From Guillardia theta CCMP2712 (taxonomy: Eukaryota > Protista > Cryptophyta), in contig NW_005434587.1 in NCBI RefSeq assembly GCF_000315625.1, forward strand, positions 124,001-188,000: DNA of 64,000 nt, given 5' to 3'. Below are positions 11,201 through 16,579 of this stretch, piece by piece. The notes below the pieces were generated by a model, which worked only from the letters and a program-made list of their open reading frames with translations, ran no database searches and was not told the DNA's origin. The number at the start of each line of letters is the position of its first letter. Position 1 is the stretch's first letter. The translations under genes were made by a program, and so were the position numbers.

Positions 11201-12501
11201 AGGAGCACTGTCTGATAGTGGACGGCAAGGCGCTGTTAGAAATCATGCGAGCGCAGGAGGAGAAAGACGCGAGTTCTGACAGCCTCGATCTCATGCTCTC
11301 CTTCCTCGACCTCGCTAAGAAGTGCAAGGCAGTCGTAGCATGCAGAGTTTCACCCGATCAGAAGCGTCAGATCGTCGCCATGGTAAGTCTTCAGTCCCCA
11401 TCCGCCTGTACGTGCTGAATTTTCTACTCCTCCCAGGTGAAGCACAACGTCAAGCCTTATCCGATGACCCTCGCGATCGGGGATGGAGCCAATGACGTCC
11501 CGATGATCCTGGAGGCCAGTGTCGGCATCGGCATCAGCGGCAACGAGGGCATGCAGGCTGTCCGCTCCTCCGACTATGCCATCGCGCAGTTTCGGTTCCT
11601 CAAGCGGCTGCTCCTCGTGCACGGCCGATCGAACTACAAGCGAGTGTCAGTGGTGGTTATGTACTCCCTTTACAAGAACTGCACCCTCGTCTCCACCCTC
11701 TTCGCCTTCGGAACCTACAGCGGGTGGACTGGCACAGCTCTCTTCGACGCCCTCATGCTCGCCGGGTTCAACGTCGGCTGGGCTTTCTTCGGCGTGATCA
11801 TCTTCGGCACCATCGAGAACGACGTGAGTCCGACAGCAGCCATCGCTTACCCTCAGCTCTACATGTCGGGGCAGCAGCAGCGAGACTTCAACATGCGCGT
11901 TCTCCTCCGGTGGTTCCTGACGGGGATCTACCATACCGTCATCTGCTTCTTCATCGCCTCCGCCATCTTCATGAACATGACGGTCAAGCCGACGTGGGCA
12001 GAGGACGGGCACGTGGTCTTCGGCACCATCGTTCAACAGTCCATCATAGCCGTTGTCAACCTGAAGCTGCTCATCGAGACTAACTACCTGACCAACTACA
12101 GCTTGTTCTCATACGTGCTTGGCTGGCTGCTCTTCGTCCTTGGAGGCCTGATCCACTCCCTCTGGGCCATGAGCAGCTTCTTCACGCAGATCCCGTACGA
12201 GTACTTCGACATCCATCCTGTCCTCCTCTGGTCCATCGTCGGATGGTTCACACAGCTGCTCTCCATTGTCATCGCCATGATCCCGGAGCTCTCTGTCAAG
12301 TACATCATCCGCACTTACTTCCCCCAGCCCAGCGACATCGTCAAGGAGCTCGACAACGGTCATGGCGGGGGGCTCGCCGCCCACTCGGCGGTGGCGGAGT
12401 GGGCAGGAGACTTGCCGGCGAGCGAGACGGCAGTGCAGGAGAAGAAGCCGCAGGGAGTGAAGAAGATGGACGTGCGAGTTGTCAAGCGATCTCAAGCGTG
12501 A
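8272..12501 (+). CDS. P4-type ATPase phospholipid flippase (ATP8A/Drs2/ALA family)
   Basis: Motifs NSVTTAKYT, LDGETNLK, PISLYVS, ARTSNLNEELGQIEYIFSDKTGTLT (phospho-Asp), ESPDEGALV, IEDKLQ, LTGDKQETA, CRVSPDQK and AIGDGANDV. Introns 9541-9592, 10304-10356 and 11383-11436; a possible last intron would move the stop to ~12543. Confidence 0.96.
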
Positions 12502-12594
12502 GAAGACTTGTAGGTTGGAAACCTTCACTTGCGGTGGAGGTGAGGGAGCGGCGGGAAGCGACGGTCCAGCTCTGGGCTCCGGTATGATCGAAAT

Positions 12595-12640
12595 AGAGGA
12601 GAGGAGAGGAGAGGAGAGGAGAGGAGAGGAGAGGAGAGAA
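12595..12640. repeat. (GGAGA)n microsatellite between convergent genes
   Basis: Tandem pentamer seen directly. Confidence 0.9.
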
Positions 12641-12689
12641 GCGTGCGGGTGTTGACTATCCGTGTGCGGTAAAAGTGTTAAAGAACGCA

Positions 12690-15369
12690 TCAGCTGTACT
12701 TCTTCACAAACATCTCGTGGTGTCTGCGGAAGTGCGACATGGCTGTCTTCAGCTTGTCCTCTGCTGGCAGGAAGGTCAGTCGGATGTGGTTGGGCCCATC
12801 GAAGCCGCTGCCGGGGACAGCGCAGATGCCGGTGTTCTCGAGGAGCGAGAGAGCGTAGAAGGTATCGGGAGCATGCTTCGCGCCCTCAGCCGCTGCGATG
12901 GCCTTGGGCGGCAGGTCGAGCTTGGGGAAGGCGTACATGGCGCCCTTGAGTGGCTGGCAGGAGACACCAGCGATCTCGTTGAGACTTTCATGGAGGAAGA
13001 TGCTCTTCCTCTTCAAGCTGTCGAAGATTGCGCTCCTCTCCCTCGTGAAGTCCTCGTACGACTCGTCGCCAGGCAAGGGAGGACGGATCATGAGGTCGAC
13101 CATCACTTGCCCGTCGATGTTGGAGCAGAGTCCGGAGGAGGCGAGCTTGTAGATCTGAGCCTGAACCTCCGGGTCAAAACCGCACAACTCCATGTAGCCC
13201 CCGCGCCTCCCGCACTCCCCGATTATTCCCTTGGATGTCGAGTGGAAGGAGACGAACTCAAAGCCGGAGAACTCGGGCCCGAGGTCCCGGACGACCTTCT
13301 TGAGCGACACGAAGGGGCGATCAGCATAGATGTTCTCCTGGTACACCTCGTCCGCAAGCAGCACAAGGCCTTCAGCCTTGCAGAGCTTGACCAGGTCGAC
13401 AAGATTGTCGTAGCTCAGGCAGTTGCCGACGGGGTTGCCGGGGTTGATGAGCACGAGGGCCTTGGGTTTGGCTCCTTGCACTCTCGCCTCGCGGATCTTC
13501 TCCATGAGCTCGTCGATGTTGAGAGCCCAGCCCTTGGACTCGTCAAGGCTGTAACCTACCTGCGTCCCGTTGAGCAGCTTGATCAGCGCGCTGTAGATGG
13601 GATACTGGGGCAGTGGCACTAGAATCGCGTCTGTGGGTTCCGCTATGATCGTGGTGAGGATCATTTGAATGCCACTTGATGCCCCGTTGGTGAGGAAGAT
13701 ATCTCCTACCTGCGCAGGATGCCCGTCCCTTCCCTTGATGAACTCTGCTACATGCTTCCTGATCCCTTCGATGCCCTGGCTGTGAGAGTAGGCTCCAGTT
13801 CCTCCCTTGATCAGACCGATCAGTTCCTTCGCCCTCTTGATCACATCCGGCTTGAACAACTTCTCCACTCCCTCCCTCTCAAGCAGCATCGGGCAGTCCA
13901 CCAGCGCAAGGACCTGAGGCCATATCATACCCTGACACATCTGCAGAGGACTATACCTCTCTGTAGAAGGTGATCGGCTTTTGTCCCACAGAATGAGGGT
14001 TGCCAATGTTACAATACAGAACCTGGTAAAGAAAGGAGTCAAACAATCGTGGACATGATGGAAGATACTCAAAGTCAACACGAGGTACCTCCTTGAACGG
14101 CTTCGAGGTGTCTCCGTTAAGAATCTCTTTCTGAATGCGCTCAGCTGTGATGGGCACGAGGCCACGGACTGCATACTGCATCTCCACCAAGTTCTGGTTG
14201 ATGTTCTTCTTTGTGAGCACCTTCCCAGACGACTGCAAGTACTGCATCTTCCACAGCGCAAGGTCGGCATAGTGCGTATCCTTCGGAGACAGCGCCTGCT
14301 CTCTTGTGACTTGATCGGTCATCCTTGCTTTCAGCCGATTCCAGATCGTGGCAGCTCCACCAGCCTCTTGCAGGTAAGACTGCATGAAATCCGTTGCCGC
14401 AATCCTTAGCAGAGTGCAGTTGGAGAGGGCACGTGCGGAGAGGGAGGTAGCGATTCCTTTGATGAAGACTGATTCTTCGTGGAAGAATGCGTCTTCTCCT
14501 GGGGTAACTGAAGCATTCAAACCCAGCCCTTCGTGAAATGCCTCAACTGAGCCTTCAAGAACGATGTAGAAGCACTCGTACTCCTCTCCATCGATAGTCT
14601 TGGCTTTATCCGGAATAGTTTCGCCCTCATTGAAAGCAACTTTCTCCCCCAGGAACATCATCAGCGCTCTTTCTTCGGGATGAAAGGCTTGCAGCTCCTG
14701 CTCGGTGAGTTTGGTTTGTAAGGGGTCGTGAAGGATTTCATACATCTTCTCACTGAGCAACAGTGAACGATGCTCGATGGCCTGTTTGAATTCGTCCAGG
14801 TCAATAGCTCCAGTTTTCTTGACATCAACAGCATAGAAAACTTTTTCGGCCTGACTCAAAATCTTCTCATCGTCAAAAGATTTCAATTCAGGATCCAGTC
14901 GAGAGACGTGCATGTAAAATTCGATGAACTCGTTTTTCTTCAGGACACCGTCTCCGTCGGAATCCCAAAGCCTGAATTCAAACTCATCCATCGCGCTCTC
15001 GTTGCCTCGAAGCAGCACTGACAGACAGGTGGCTACTTCTTTGAAGTTGATCAAGCCATCTTTGTCAGTATCCGATACGGAAAAACATTTCTCAATGAAC
15101 ACAGCGTCCTGGAGCCCATTCAGTTTCATAAATTCTGAAAAGTCGGCCTAATAAACCACAAAAATCATCCACGAGCAATTGAAACCGAACGAATTCTCAC
15201 AAGATTCATTCTCCCGTCCCCTCCTCCATTTCGCTTGAATTGCGCATACAGGGACTGAAAACAGCGATCAAACCATCATCCCTCCCTGCTGCTCCTGGCA
15301 TACCTCTAGCTCGTTCTTCCCGAATTCCGTCTGACTCAGGAGGTCTATCAAGGTCTTCTTATCAAACAT
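12690..15369 (-). CDS. Fusion protein: NCS/calcineurin-B-like EF-hand domain + cyclic-nucleotide-binding-like domain + alanine (or glutamate:glyoxylate) aminotransferase
   Basis: EF loops DTDKDGLINFKE, DSDGDGVLKKNE and DVKKTGAIDLDE. CNB-like segment FYIVLEGSVEA...SARALSNCTLLRI. AlaAT motifs MQYAVRG, CNIGNP, GAYSHSQG, LINPGNPVG, LADEVYQEN and SFHSTSKG (PLP lysine). In-frame introns 15255-15303, 15148-15200, 14023-14088 and 13914-13956. Confidence 0.92.
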
Positions 15370-16579
15370 GGCAGCCTTTGTTCCTACGCATGGAACGTGA
15401 AAATTGATTTCAGGAAAAAGAACAGATCAGTGCAAGATGTCGGTCATGTGCATGCGAAATCAGAGCGAAAGGCGTGAGGCTCTTAAGGAAAGCATCACAC
15501 CAAGTGAAACGAGAAGGTCTACAGACAGTTATCGTGAGAGGATAATGTGTCAACGATGGATAATTTCTATGAGCCGGGACAAAGGATGCCAGAAGTGCAT
15601 GTTCGTAAGAGATTGACATGAAAAAGGAGGGAGGCATCAAGTTAGTATGAAGGAAATATTGAACATGATGGAAGCCCAGAGGTCGCGATGGATTGAGATA
15701 CGGAGAATTCACAACTATAGTGTACGGAAGGCAGCCGGGAAAATTGATGAGGGTGAGGAGGGGGGATGAGATGAGACGAGACGAAGACGGCAGGGGAACT
15801 AAGACGAGGTAGCAGGGAAGGGACTTTCTTGCCATGACATTATTGAAGGCGGGAGAGGAATGGCGGAGAGGGAGGGCGTAAGGGGGAGGACAAGGACACA
15901 GCGGGGGAATCGCCATGATTCCTAAAACAATCTAGAGAAAGGGGGTGGGGGTGAAATTATGATGGGTAGGGGTCACTACCCCTGGGATAATTTTGAGGAG
16001 ATTTGAGAGTGAAGAATTGGGCAATTCAAGGGTGATATGATCGCGTGTGGGGTGGGGGTTCTACATTGGTGGTTGTCGTACAACCAAAGGGGCGCAGTCC
16101 ATGACCGGTGATACCACAACACTACCCCTGTATTGACCTGACAGTTGTCTATGTTGATAGGGGTACTCCAAGGCTTTTTCAACGGTCAATATCATCCTGG
16201 TAGGGTACAAGCAGCAAAAATGATCCTGCGAGGCGGGGGGGGGGAGGGTGATTGGGAAACCAGGGCTGAGCCAAGGACCCTACCTGGCGATTTGATACCT
16301 TTGATAGAGAAAACCACGGGTGATCAGTTCCTGGATGGGGTGCCGGGCCGACGGTGTCATTGTTCGAGATGGGTGGGGTGGTCTATGCCGCAGTGCCGCC
16401 CGCTGACTCAGTCGGACTCAGTCACCGGGAAGAACATGATTGGCGCCGGCGAGTCACGCCGGGCGCGGGCCCGCCCGGGAAGACAGCAGGCCCGAAAAAT
16501 GAACGGAAGTTGCCCTGAATCAGATAAATGTGGAGCCGGGGCGGCCCGTGGTTCCTCGTCAGAAGGTCGTGAATAGATG

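What the first reader, a model, noticed from the sequence alone, without database searches (positions are those of the whole stretch)
12690..15369. Alanine aminotransferase fused to a calcium-sensor domain and a cNMP-binding-like domain
A single ORF (13951-15129) runs from the EF-hands through the CNB-like domain into the AlaAT N-terminus, so the fusion is not a gene-model artefact. Characterised AlaAT/GGAT enzymes are stand-alone, and I know of no such regulatory fusion. Two EF loops are canonical. The CNB phosphate-binding cassette is degenerate (FFHEESVF..ATSLSARA, no GE or Arg), so it may bind another ligand or relay conformation. No PTS1 is present (ends KKYS). Inference: direct Ca2+ control of carbon/nitrogen or photorespiratory flux.
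Basis: partly seen in the sequence, partly recalled or inferred. Interest (0 to 1): 0.75.

Follow-up and report, generated by a model that had tools for sequence, protein, structure and literature searches.

The report
Calcium-sensor-fused alanine aminotransferase in cryptophytes
The cryptophyte alga Guillardia theta makes, as one spliced mRNA, an ordinary-looking alanine aminotransferase with a calcium-sensor domain and a degenerate cyclic-nucleotide-sensor domain at its front end, which suggests, but does not show, that calcium signals act directly on a central carbon-nitrogen enzyme.

Summary
The window is Guillardia theta nuclear DNA. On the minus strand, 15369-12690, lies a five-exon gene with four GT-AG introns, all phase 0, encoding 822 aa. 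Its domains are an NCS/calaxin-like four-EF-hand domain, a cNMP-binding-like (CNB-like) domain, a helical linker and a complete alanine aminotransferase (AlaAT).

Spliced transcript contigs from three independent studies carry all four junctions and the whole coding region. The public gene model (482 aa) holds only the AlaAT part.

The same architecture occurs in Hanusia, Hemiselmis and Teleaulax transcriptomes and in environmental cryptophyte sequences. These fused enzymes form one clade beside stand-alone cryptophyte AlaATs. G. theta also keeps at least three unfused paralogs.

The phosphate-binding cassette lacks the canonical Gly and Arg and keeps only the Glu.

New here: the whole EF+CNB module is homologous, end to end, to one fused to malic enzyme in Tetraselmis and other eukaryotes. 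A separate bacterial AlaAT clade carries a different EF-hand pair.

No paper on either fusion was found. Ca2+ control of catalysis is inferred, not shown. The scan had also noted a different EF-hand enzyme fusion (plastid terminal oxidase, PTOX) elsewhere in this genome.

The parts
12690..15369 (-). Whole coding span of the fused gene: 5 exons, 822 codons plus the stop
   Evidence: Exon lengths are 66, 54, 1059, 66 and 1224 nt, all multiples of 3. Spliced contigs span it.
15370..15741 (-). 5' UTR, at least this long; it holds a mini-uORF (ATG CGT TAG) at 15391-15383
   Evidence: The run X2 contig reaches 15741 unspliced. Low-depth contigs reach 15906. In-frame stops lie upstream of the ATG.
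15304..15369 (-). Exon 1 (22 aa): start codon and the entering helix of the degenerate EF1
15255..15303 (-). Intron 1, 49 nt, GT..AG
   Evidence: The joint is present in runs X1, X2 and X9; ends.
15201..15254 (-). Exon 2 (18 aa): the degenerate EF1 loop
15148..15200 (-). Intron 2, 53 nt, GT..AG
14089..15147 (-). Exon 3 (353 aa): EF2-EF4, the CNB-like domain, the linker and the first ~45 residues of AlaAT. This single exon joins the three domains.
14023..14088 (-). Intron 3, 66 nt, GT..AG. It is in frame and free of stops, so the raw ORF reads through it.
   Evidence: the public model P0001 skips it.
13957..14022 (-). Exon 4 (22 aa), AlaAT N-terminal part (VLYCNIGNP...)
13914..13956 (-). Intron 4, 43 nt, GT..AG; it holds the TAG that ends the raw 392-aa ORF
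12690..13913 (-). Exon 5 (407 aa plus stop): the main body of AlaAT
   Evidence: Barley AlaAT2 (3TCM) E 2.4e-130; human ALT2 (3IHJ) E 1.2e-110.
14743..15369 (-). NCS/calaxin-like four-EF-hand Ca2+-sensor domain (spans introns 1 and 2)
   Evidence: The best solved-structure matches by sequence are GCAP1/3, hippocalcin, neurocalcin, NCS-1 and calcineurin B. By fold the match is calaxin.
15034..15072 (-). EF2 loop, DTDKDGLINFKEV, canonical
   Evidence: Matches PS00018.
14926..14964 (-). EF3 loop, DSDGDGVLKKNEF: ligands at positions 1, 3, 5 and 12 are present, with Lys at position 9. This is the best-conserved loop across the module family.
14788..14826 (-). EF4 loop, DVKKTGAIDLDEF: Lys at ligand position 3, so Ca2+ binding is doubtful
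   Evidence: Sequence; not matched.
14290..14685 (-). Cyclic-nucleotide-binding-like (CNB-like) domain: beta roll plus C-terminal helices
   Evidence: Pfam cNMP_binding above the cut-off. AF2 model pLDDT 84. Foldseek finds HCN, SthK, MlotiK1 and CAP. The profile hits PKG and PKA-R at E about 1e-12.
14428..14487 (-). Degenerate phosphate-binding cassette (FFHEESVF...ATSLSARA): the Glu is kept, the Gly and the phosphate-binding Arg are lost
   Evidence: Profile alignment to PKA-R and PKG; alignment of orthologs.
14221..14289 (-). Predicted helical linker between the CNB C-helix and the AlaAT N-terminal arm
   Evidence: Helices 265-286 and 291-299 in the model. The Hemiselmis full-length model has equivalent helices 314-336 and 341-354.
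12693..14220 (-). Alanine aminotransferase region (spans introns 3 and 4); the NPGNP, ADEVYQ, STSKG and GECGRRGGY motifs are intact
13230..13232 (-). Codon of the PLP-binding lysine (the K of STSKG)
   Evidence: Motif position; alignment to 3TCM; sequence.

Best explanation
This is a cryptophyte-specific paralog of a standard eukaryotic alanine aminotransferase. It has gained an N-terminal regulatory cassette of about 330 aa. The cassette is an NCS/calaxin-like four-EF-hand Ca2+ sensor (EF1 dead, EF2 and EF3 competent, EF4 doubtful) followed by a CNB-like domain whose cNMP pocket has lost its Gly and Arg. The G. theta protein has no targeting peptide, so it is probably cytosolic. Proposed mechanism, inferred and not shown: Ca2+ binding at EF2 and EF3 changes the shape of the sensor. 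The change passes through the CNB-like domain and its C-terminal helices, which continue as a helical linker into the AlaAT N-terminal arm. In this aminotransferase class that arm takes part in dimer contacts and domain closure. The pyruvate + glutamate <-> alanine + 2-oxoglutarate reaction would thus be turned up or down by cytosolic Ca2+ without a kinase. The CNB-like domain most likely acts as a relay, as the non-binding CNB-homology domains of KCNH channels do, and not as a cAMP/cGMP receptor. The cassette is portable: a homologous copy, with a more canonical G-E cassette, sits on MaeB-type malic enzyme in Tetraselmis and other eukaryotes. Both hosts are enzymes that make or use pyruvate.
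For: Shown. One exon joins the three domains. Spliced contigs of 2.5-2.8 kb from three studies carry all four junctions and the full coding region. Hanusia, Hemiselmis, Teleaulax and environmental orthologs are collinear over the module at 28-88% identity. The fused AlaATs form one clade (support 97) next to stand-alone cryptophyte AlaATs. G. theta has at least three unfused paralogs, and no second copy of the module was detected. The sensor is NCS-like by sequence and calaxin-like by fold. The EF2 and EF3 ligands are present, and EF3 is conserved across the family. The CNB fold is confirmed. The catalytic motifs are intact and the match to barley AlaAT2 is E 2e-130. Module homology between the AlaAT and malic-enzyme fusions: hhalign probability 99.9%, E 5e-34, 270 collinear columns. 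The best match of the Tetraselmis protein in the G. theta genome is this locus. Inferred: Ca2+ binding, transmission through the linker, the effect on catalysis, and cytosolic location.
Against: There is no biochemical evidence of any kind. Contigs cannot show transcript starts, so an additional AlaAT-only isoform from an internal start is not excluded. The public model starts at the internal Met. EF loops are degenerate in some orthologs: P0003 has no PS00018 match, and clade B has lost EF2. The interface test between the module and the AlaAT gave no verdict. Only four positions of the catalytic domain differ consistently between the fused clade and other AlaATs, so no obvious regulatory surface is visible.
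Confidence: 0.55

Rival explanations
1. The cassette does not tune catalysis. It places the enzyme instead: Ca2+-dependent binding of the NCS-like domain to a partner protein or membrane would recruit AlaAT to a site or a complex, as NCS proteins do with their targets.
For: The closest solved relatives (GCAPs, KChIPs, calaxin, NCS-1) all work by binding target proteins. The catalytic domain shows almost no clade-specific changes. The module-to-enzyme interface was not supported, which is no evidence either way.
Against: There is no N-myristoylation signal: the protein starts MFDKK. The sensor is covalently tied to the N-terminal arm by a predicted helical linker. The same cassette sits directly in front of a second enzyme, which fits control in cis.
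Confidence: 0.2
2. The CNB-like domain is a working ligand sensor, for cAMP/cGMP bound in an unusual way or for another small molecule such as a metabolite. The enzyme would then integrate Ca2+ with a second signal.
For: The domain passes the Pfam cut-off and has the full beta-roll fold. The cassette Glu and a conserved F-x-x-[ED]-E-[ST]-[VL]-[FL] motif are kept across cryptophytes. The malic-enzyme versions keep G-E and, in P0274, an Arg near the canonical place.
Against: None of the cryptophyte AlaAT fusions examined has the canonical Gly or the phosphate-binding Arg. In characterised CNB domains these are needed for tight cNMP binding (established knowledge of PKA, CAP and HCN).
Confidence: 0.13
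3. The fusion is transcribed but is functionally minor or vestigial. Most protein would be AlaAT alone, from an internal start, or the cassette would be an inert appendage.
For: The public model starts at an internal Met and gives a complete AlaAT. Contigs cannot show 5' ends. The one raw-read RNA run placed only 7 reads. Some EF loops have decayed in orthologs.
Against: The module has stayed an open reading frame with conserved core residues in at least four genera and two deep clades. The contigs have one depth over the whole coding region in three studies. The few raw reads fall in both the EF part and the AlaAT part.
Confidence: 0.09
4. Assembly or annotation artefact: two neighbouring genes are wrongly read as one.
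For: Public gene calls split the locus: P0001 (482 aa, AlaAT) and P0122 (119 aa, EF part) lie on the same scaffold.
Against: One exon without a stop covers the domain junctions. Spliced RNA contigs from three studies span everything. Independent transcriptomes of other genera show the same fusion.
Confidence: 0.02

Closest known systems
Eukaryotic alanine aminotransferase (barley AlaAT2, PDB 3TCM; human ALT2, PDB 3IHJ)
   Same: The catalytic region aligns end to end at E 2.4e-130 and 1.2e-110. The PLP lysine and the NPGNP, ADEVYQ and GECGRRGGY motifs are intact.
   Different: The solved enzymes have no sensor domains. This protein carries about 330 extra N-terminal residues (EF hands plus a CNB-like domain). 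It has V for T in the NPGNP-T-G motif, as does the whole fused clade, and it lacks three residues before the C-terminal Arg region.
Neuronal-calcium-sensor family (GCAP1/3, hippocalcin, NCS-1, KChIP, calaxin/EFCAB1)
   Same: Four EF hands with a dead EF1. The best sequence matches in the PDB (E about 1e-11) and the best fold match (calaxin) belong to this family.
   Different: There is no myristoylation signal. The domain is not a free protein but the N-terminal domain of an enzyme. EF4 lacks a ligand.
Cyclic-nucleotide-binding domains (PKA-R, PKG, CAP, HCN/MlotiK1), and the non-binding CNB-homology domains of KCNH channels
   Same: Beta-roll fold with a cassette helix and C-terminal helices. 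The domain passes the Pfam cut-off, and the profile hits PKG and PKA-R.
   Different: The cassette lacks the Gly and the phosphate-binding Arg and keeps only the Glu. In that respect it resembles KCNH-type non-binding domains (comparison from established knowledge, not tested here).
EF+CNB-malic enzyme fusions (Tetraselmis striata P0279, 909 aa; Pyxidicula transcriptome P0187; environmental P0273 and P0274)
   Same: The N-terminal cassette is homologous as a unit: hhalign probability 99.9%, 270 collinear columns. The order of parts is the same, and a pyruvate-handling enzyme follows.
   Different: The enzyme is a MaeB-type malic enzyme, not AlaAT. The cassette is closer to canonical (G-E present). 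These proteins occur outside cryptophytes.
Bacterial-type EF-hand-pair AlaAT (P0032, P0038, P0070; about 600 aa)
   Same: Canonical EF hands lie N-terminal to an AlaAT that is 54-57% identical to this one.
   Different: These proteins have only two EF hands and no CNB domain. They form a separate clade in the AlaAT tree (support 99), and P0032 lies on a bacterial contig. Their EF region shows only generic EF-hand similarity to this module. This is an independent fusion.
Other enzymes with built-in EF hands (CDPKs, NOX5/RBOH, mitochondrial glycerol-3-phosphate dehydrogenase; the G. theta PTOX-EF-hand gene)
   Same: The principle is the same: a Ca2+ sensor fused in cis to a catalytic domain. The first three examples are from established knowledge. 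The PTOX ORF was seen.
   Different: None of these is an aminotransferase. The PTOX EF region shares only generic EF-hand similarity with this module, over 108 columns, with no match in the CNB part.

Membership tests
Alanine aminotransferase (class I/II aminotransferase, PF00155) | Significant full-length similarity to characterised or solved AlaAT | tested here: met
   PF00155 at 138.6 bits. 3TCM E 2.4e-130 over residues 1-406 of exon 5; 3IHJ E 1.2e-110.
Alanine aminotransferase (class I/II aminotransferase, PF00155) | PLP-binding lysine (S-x-S-K-G) and the PLP/substrate motifs NPGNP, ADEVYQ and GECG-RGGY | tested here: met
   All are present in exon 5 at residues 157, 187, 225 and 232-237 and align with those of 3TCM.
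Alanine aminotransferase (class I/II aminotransferase, PF00155) | Alanine:2-oxoglutarate transaminase activity (as against glutamate:glyoxylate) | not testable with these tools
   This needs an enzyme assay. There is no PTS1: the protein ends KKYS.
EF-hand Ca2+ sensors, NCS-like subgroup | Canonical 12-residue loops with ligands at positions 1, 3, 5 and 12 | tested here: met
   EF2 matches PS00018. EF3 has all four ligand positions, with Lys at position 9. EF4 and EF1 do not qualify.
EF-hand Ca2+ sensors, NCS-like subgroup | Four-EF-hand globule with an inactive EF1; closest relatives are NCS proteins | tested here: met
   The top PDB matches are GCAP1/3, hippocalcin, neurocalcin and NCS-1. 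The fold match is calaxin.
EF-hand Ca2+ sensors, NCS-like subgroup | N-terminal myristoylation signal (M-G-x-x-x-S/T) | tested here: not met
   The protein starts MFDKK. The domain is therefore NCS-like, not a classical myristoyl-switch NCS protein. Calaxin also lacks the signal (established knowledge).
EF-hand Ca2+ sensors, NCS-like subgroup | Measured Ca2+ binding | not testable with these tools
   Needs ITC, 45Ca overlay or a spectroscopic assay.
Cyclic-nucleotide-binding domain (PF00027) | Profile match above the curated threshold and a beta-roll fold | tested here: met
   34.2 bits against 27.5. AF2 model pLDDT 84. Foldseek finds HCN, SthK, MlotiK1 (TM 0.66 by target) and CAP.
Cyclic-nucleotide-binding domain (PF00027) | Phosphate-binding cassette with G-E and the phosphate-binding Arg | tested here: not met
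   H-E replaces G-E, and Ala/Thr stands at the Arg column in the alignment to PKA-R and PKG. None of the cryptophyte AlaAT fusions examined has the Gly. I therefore call it 'CNB-like' and do not file it as a cNMP receptor.
EF+CNB enzyme cassette (provisional family defined here: AlaAT and malic-enzyme fusions) | Collinear homology over the EF2-EF4, inter-domain and CNB parts, N-terminal to an enzyme | tested here: met
   hhalign probability 99.9%, E 5e-34, 270 columns. Single-stretch phmmer matches cover residues 2-282 of the query. The reciprocal best hit in the G. theta genome is this locus.

The most novel reading that the evidence does not exclude
A portable second-messenger cassette (NCS-like EF hands plus a CNB domain) has been attached in different algal lineages to enzymes of the pyruvate node: AlaAT in cryptophytes, and malic enzyme in Tetraselmis and others. 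There it switches these enzymes directly in response to Ca2+ and, in the malic-enzyme versions, perhaps cNMP. This would be a kinase-independent route from signalling to central carbon-nitrogen metabolism that has not been described.
Probability: 0.35. Interest if true: 0.8.

Novelty: new variant of a known kind. Interest (0 to 1): 0.6.

Why it matters
How algae couple fast Ca2+ signals (nutrient resupply, light, hypoxia, osmotic shocks) to primary metabolism is largely unknown, and known routes run through kinases. Here a Ca2+ sensor is built into an enzyme that links pyruvate, alanine, glutamate and 2-oxoglutarate. The effect of Ca2+ can therefore be tested on one recombinant protein. The same cassette on malic enzyme suggests a shared logic at the pyruvate node. 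On the practical side, the public G. theta model for this gene is truncated to the AlaAT part. Orthologs are labelled 'calmodulin' or 'hypothetical', so the architecture is invisible in current annotation.

Tried and rejected
1. Complex prediction, module against the AlaAT part (P0001): no verdict, score 0.00. It is not used as evidence either way.

2. Word-index searches with the module of P0007 and with the CNB part of the G. theta module returned only the query or the G. theta sequence itself. The first was swamped by EF-hand words. They say nothing about absence.

3. The profile alignment to PKA-R and PKG shows it is the beta-7 V-[R/K]-A position, so I withdrew that reading.

4. The 265-aa N-terminal extension of the sister AlaAT P0026 shows no relation to the module (hhalign probability 0.4%).

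5. The G. theta PTOX-EF-hand ORF (an earlier finding of the scan) is not the same cassette: it shows only generic EF-hand similarity over 108 columns.

6. A look for GTDB genomes with the bacterial EF-hand-AlaAT N-terminus found none. That method finds close relatives only.

7. A search for fused-clade-specific residues in the catalytic domain gave four minor positions and no clear regulatory surface.

8. The ESM Atlas fold search found only single-domain matches. The feature search found diatom EF+cNMP clusters of 259-287 aa that I could not examine further.

9. The joined five-exon G. theta protein was not sent to any search or fold tool. Exons were used by reference, together with the public partial model P0001 and stored orthologs.
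Full report
**Identity of the window and the gene**

The AlaAT part matches Guillardia theta CCMP2712 protein GUITHDRAFT_77426 at 99% identity (P0001). The window is contig C87 of an 87-Mb genome.

Two overlapping ORFs lie on the minus strand: 13951-15129 (392 aa) and 12690-14270 (526 aa). Pfam places EF-hand families and cNMP_binding (34.2 bits, cut-off 27.5) on the first ORF. It places Aminotran_1_2 (138.6 bits) on the second.

Reading the sequence together with the RNA joints gives five exons:
- 15369-15304
- 15254-15201
- 15147-14089
- 14022-13957
- 13913-12690

The introns are 49, 53, 66 and 43 nt, all GT..AG. Every exon length is a multiple of three, which gives 822 codons. In-frame stops lie just upstream of the ATG at 15369.

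Exon 3 alone encodes EF2-EF4, the CNB-like domain, the linker and the first residues of AlaAT. The domain junctions therefore do not depend on any splice.

I used the exons by reference, the public partial model P0001 and stored orthologs.

**Transcription**

Assembled contigs from three different studies (runs X1, X2 and X9) lie on the locus with all four introns removed exactly. Single contigs of 2502 and 2840 nt run from the 3' end (12678 or 12691) through the start codon. In X2 the contig runs on to 15741.

Because the introns are removed, these contigs come from RNA. Contigs cannot show where transcripts start, so an additional internal start is not excluded. The only raw-read RNA run placed 7 reads. 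They fall in both the EF part and the AlaAT part.

The public annotation splits the locus into a 482-aa AlaAT model that starts at an internal Met and a 119-aa EF-hand call on the same scaffold.

**Conservation**

The same three-part architecture is present in several cryptophytes:
- Hemiselmis andersenii (MMETSP transcript, 838 aa, labelled 'Calmodulin')
- Teleaulax amphioxeia (793 aa)
- Hanusia phi (873 aa; 90% identical in exon 3 and 95% in exon 5, with the first two introns retained)
- several environmental sequences of 839-913 aa

The N-terminal modules align collinearly at 28-88% identity. They fall into two groups. One is a Guillardia/Hemiselmis type without an N-terminal extension. The other is a Teleaulax type with an Arg/Ala-rich extension of 70-100 aa that looks like a mitochondrial presequence (my inference from its composition).

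I built a FastTree tree of 117 AlaAT domains. In it the fused proteins form one clade (support 97), nested among stand-alone AlaATs. These include a G. theta paralog (GUITHDRAFT_159157, in the cluster of P0009) and a Baffinella AlaAT.

The G. theta genome holds at least three more AlaAT loci, on contigs C12, C31 and C4. No second copy of the module was detected. The tool scores only the best candidates, so this is a lower bound.

**The sensor domain**

By sequence, the closest solved proteins are GCAP1 and GCAP3, hippocalcin, neurocalcin, NCS-1, calcineurin B and KChIP (E 1e-11 to 1e-7). The AlphaFold model of the 300-residue module has mean pLDDT 84 and pTM 0.63. Its EF half matches calaxin.

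The four EF hands differ in quality:
- EF1, which is split over exons 1-3, is degenerate, as in the NCS family.
- EF2 matches PROSITE PS00018.
- EF3 has ligands at positions 1, 3, 5 and 12, with Lys at position 9.
- EF4 has Lys at ligand position 3.

EF3 is the loop most often canonical across orthologs and across the malic-enzyme relatives. There is no myristoylation signal.

**The CNB-like domain**

The fold is a CNB beta roll with C-terminal helices. Foldseek finds HCN, SthK, MlotiK1 and CAP. A profile of the domain hits PKG and PKA-R at about 1e-12 and CAP/Vfr at about 1e-6.

In that alignment the G. theta cassette has H-E where G-E is canonical, and Ala/Thr at the column of the phosphate-binding Arg. 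The conserved A-R-A that follows corresponds to the beta-7 V-[R/K]-A. None of the cryptophyte AlaAT fusions examined has the Gly.

I call the domain CNB-like and do not treat it as a cNMP receptor.

**The enzyme**

Exon 5 aligns over its whole length with barley AlaAT2 (3TCM, E 2.4e-130) and human ALT2 (3IHJ, E 1.2e-110). The PLP lysine and the NPGNP, ADEVYQ and GECGRRGGY motifs are intact. The protein ends KKYS, which is not a PTS1. Nothing here separates AlaAT from GGAT activity.

**A wider cassette**

An exhaustive phmmer search with the 300-residue module was mostly filled by generic EF-hand proteins. The few hits that cover both the EF part and the CNB part in a single stretch are either cryptophyte AlaAT fragments or proteins in which the module precedes a MaeB-type malic enzyme. 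The malic-enzyme proteins are:
- Tetraselmis striata (909 aa, supported by a genome model and an MMETSP transcript)
- a Pyxidicula transcriptome sequence (772 aa)
- environmental sequences of 750-809 aa

Profile-to-profile comparison of the cryptophyte modules with the malic-enzyme modules gives probability 99.9%, E 5e-34 and 270 collinear columns. The best match of the Tetraselmis protein in the G. theta genome is this locus. The malic-enzyme versions keep G-E in the cassette.

AlaAT and malic enzyme both sit at pyruvate. That this is the reason for the shared cassette is my speculation.

**Independent EF-hand fusions**

About a dozen AlaATs of roughly 600 aa carry a canonical EF-hand pair and no CNB domain. 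They form their own clade (support 99). One lies on a 62-kb contig with typical bacterial neighbours: NorB/COX1, a response regulator and ACPS. Its EF region shows only generic similarity to the G. theta module.

The scan had earlier noted a PTOX-EF-hand gene in G. theta. I located a 1038-aa ORF with EF hands and an AOX domain. It shares only generic EF-hand similarity with this module.

EF hands fused to enzymes are therefore not rare in this genome. The NCS-like EF + CNB cassette on AlaAT is a specific, conserved unit.

**Mechanism**

Both models show helices that run from the CNB C-helix towards the AlaAT N-terminal arm. These are residues 265-299 in the module model and residues 314-354 in the full-length Hemiselmis model, which has pLDDT 79.5 and pTM 0.60.

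My best reading is Ca2+-dependent control of the enzyme in cis through this connection, with the CNB-like domain acting as a relay. This is inference. The interface prediction gave no verdict, and no assay exists.

**Literature**

Six full-text searches combined alanine aminotransferase, aminotransferase or malic enzyme with EF-hand, cyclic nucleotide-binding, cryptophyte, Guillardia theta or Tetraselmis. None found a paper describing either fusion. The library lacks most subscription journals, so this is not proof of novelty.

**Verdict**

- The regulatory meaning is plausible but untested.
- The kind, a Ca2+ sensor fused to an enzyme, is known. This architecture, on an aminotransferase and shared with malic enzyme, appears undescribed.

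Noticed in passing
Proteins P0279 (Tetraselmis striata, 909 aa), P0187, P0273, P0274: The homologous EF-hand + CNB cassette is fused N-terminally to a MaeB-type malic enzyme in a green alga, in an amoebozoan transcriptome and in environmental eukaryotes. Here the cassette keeps the canonical G-E. No paper on this was found.
   Followed up: partly
L014:8001-9830 (protein P0032), also P0038 and P0070: A separate clade of AlaATs of about 600 aa carries a canonical EF-hand pair. One lies on a 62-kb contig with bacterial neighbours (NorB/COX1, a response regulator, ACPS, a transposase). This looks like a bacterial Ca2+-sensor-AlaAT fusion, about 56% identical to eukaryotic AlaAT.
   Followed up: partly
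window 12690-15369 (-): The public annotation splits this gene. GUITHDRAFT_77426 (482 aa) starts at an internal Met and holds only AlaAT. A 119-aa call (P0122) on the same scaffold covers part of the EF hands. The Hemiselmis ortholog is named 'Calmodulin' in UniRef.
   Followed up: yes
window 11437-12501 (+): The last exon of a phospholipid-translocating P-type ATPase (PhoLip_ATPase_C, E 1.4e-63) converges on the 3' end of the AlaAT gene. Only about 190 nt lie between the two stop codons.
   Followed up: partly
window 12587-12648: A (CTCCT)n-type simple repeat lies in the short spacer between the two convergent genes. The read tool skipped it as a repeat.
   Followed up: no
window 15383-15391 (-): A three-codon upstream ORF (ATG CGT TAG) sits in the 5' UTR, 13 nt ahead of the start codon.
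   Followed up: no
L021:1488-4604 (G000:C92:101487-104603, +): An intron-free ORF of 1038 aa carries many EF hands and a C-terminal AOX/PTOX domain. This is the gene of the scan's earlier PTOX finding. Pfam reports no cNMP_binding hit at E <= 0.01, and the ORF is not the same cassette as the one on AlaAT.
   Followed up: partly
Proteins P0004, P0005, P0341 (Teleaulax-type clade): A second cryptophyte clade of the fused enzyme has an Arg/Ala-rich N-terminal extension of 70-100 aa that looks like a mitochondrial presequence. It has also lost the EF2 ligands. G. theta appears to lack this clade.
   Followed up: no
window exon 5, residue 162 (codon at 13428-13430): The fused clade has Val where 102 of 111 other AlaATs have Thr in the NPGNP-T-G motif. 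G. theta alone also lacks three residues in the GSGFG...H-x-R segment near the C-terminus.
   Followed up: no
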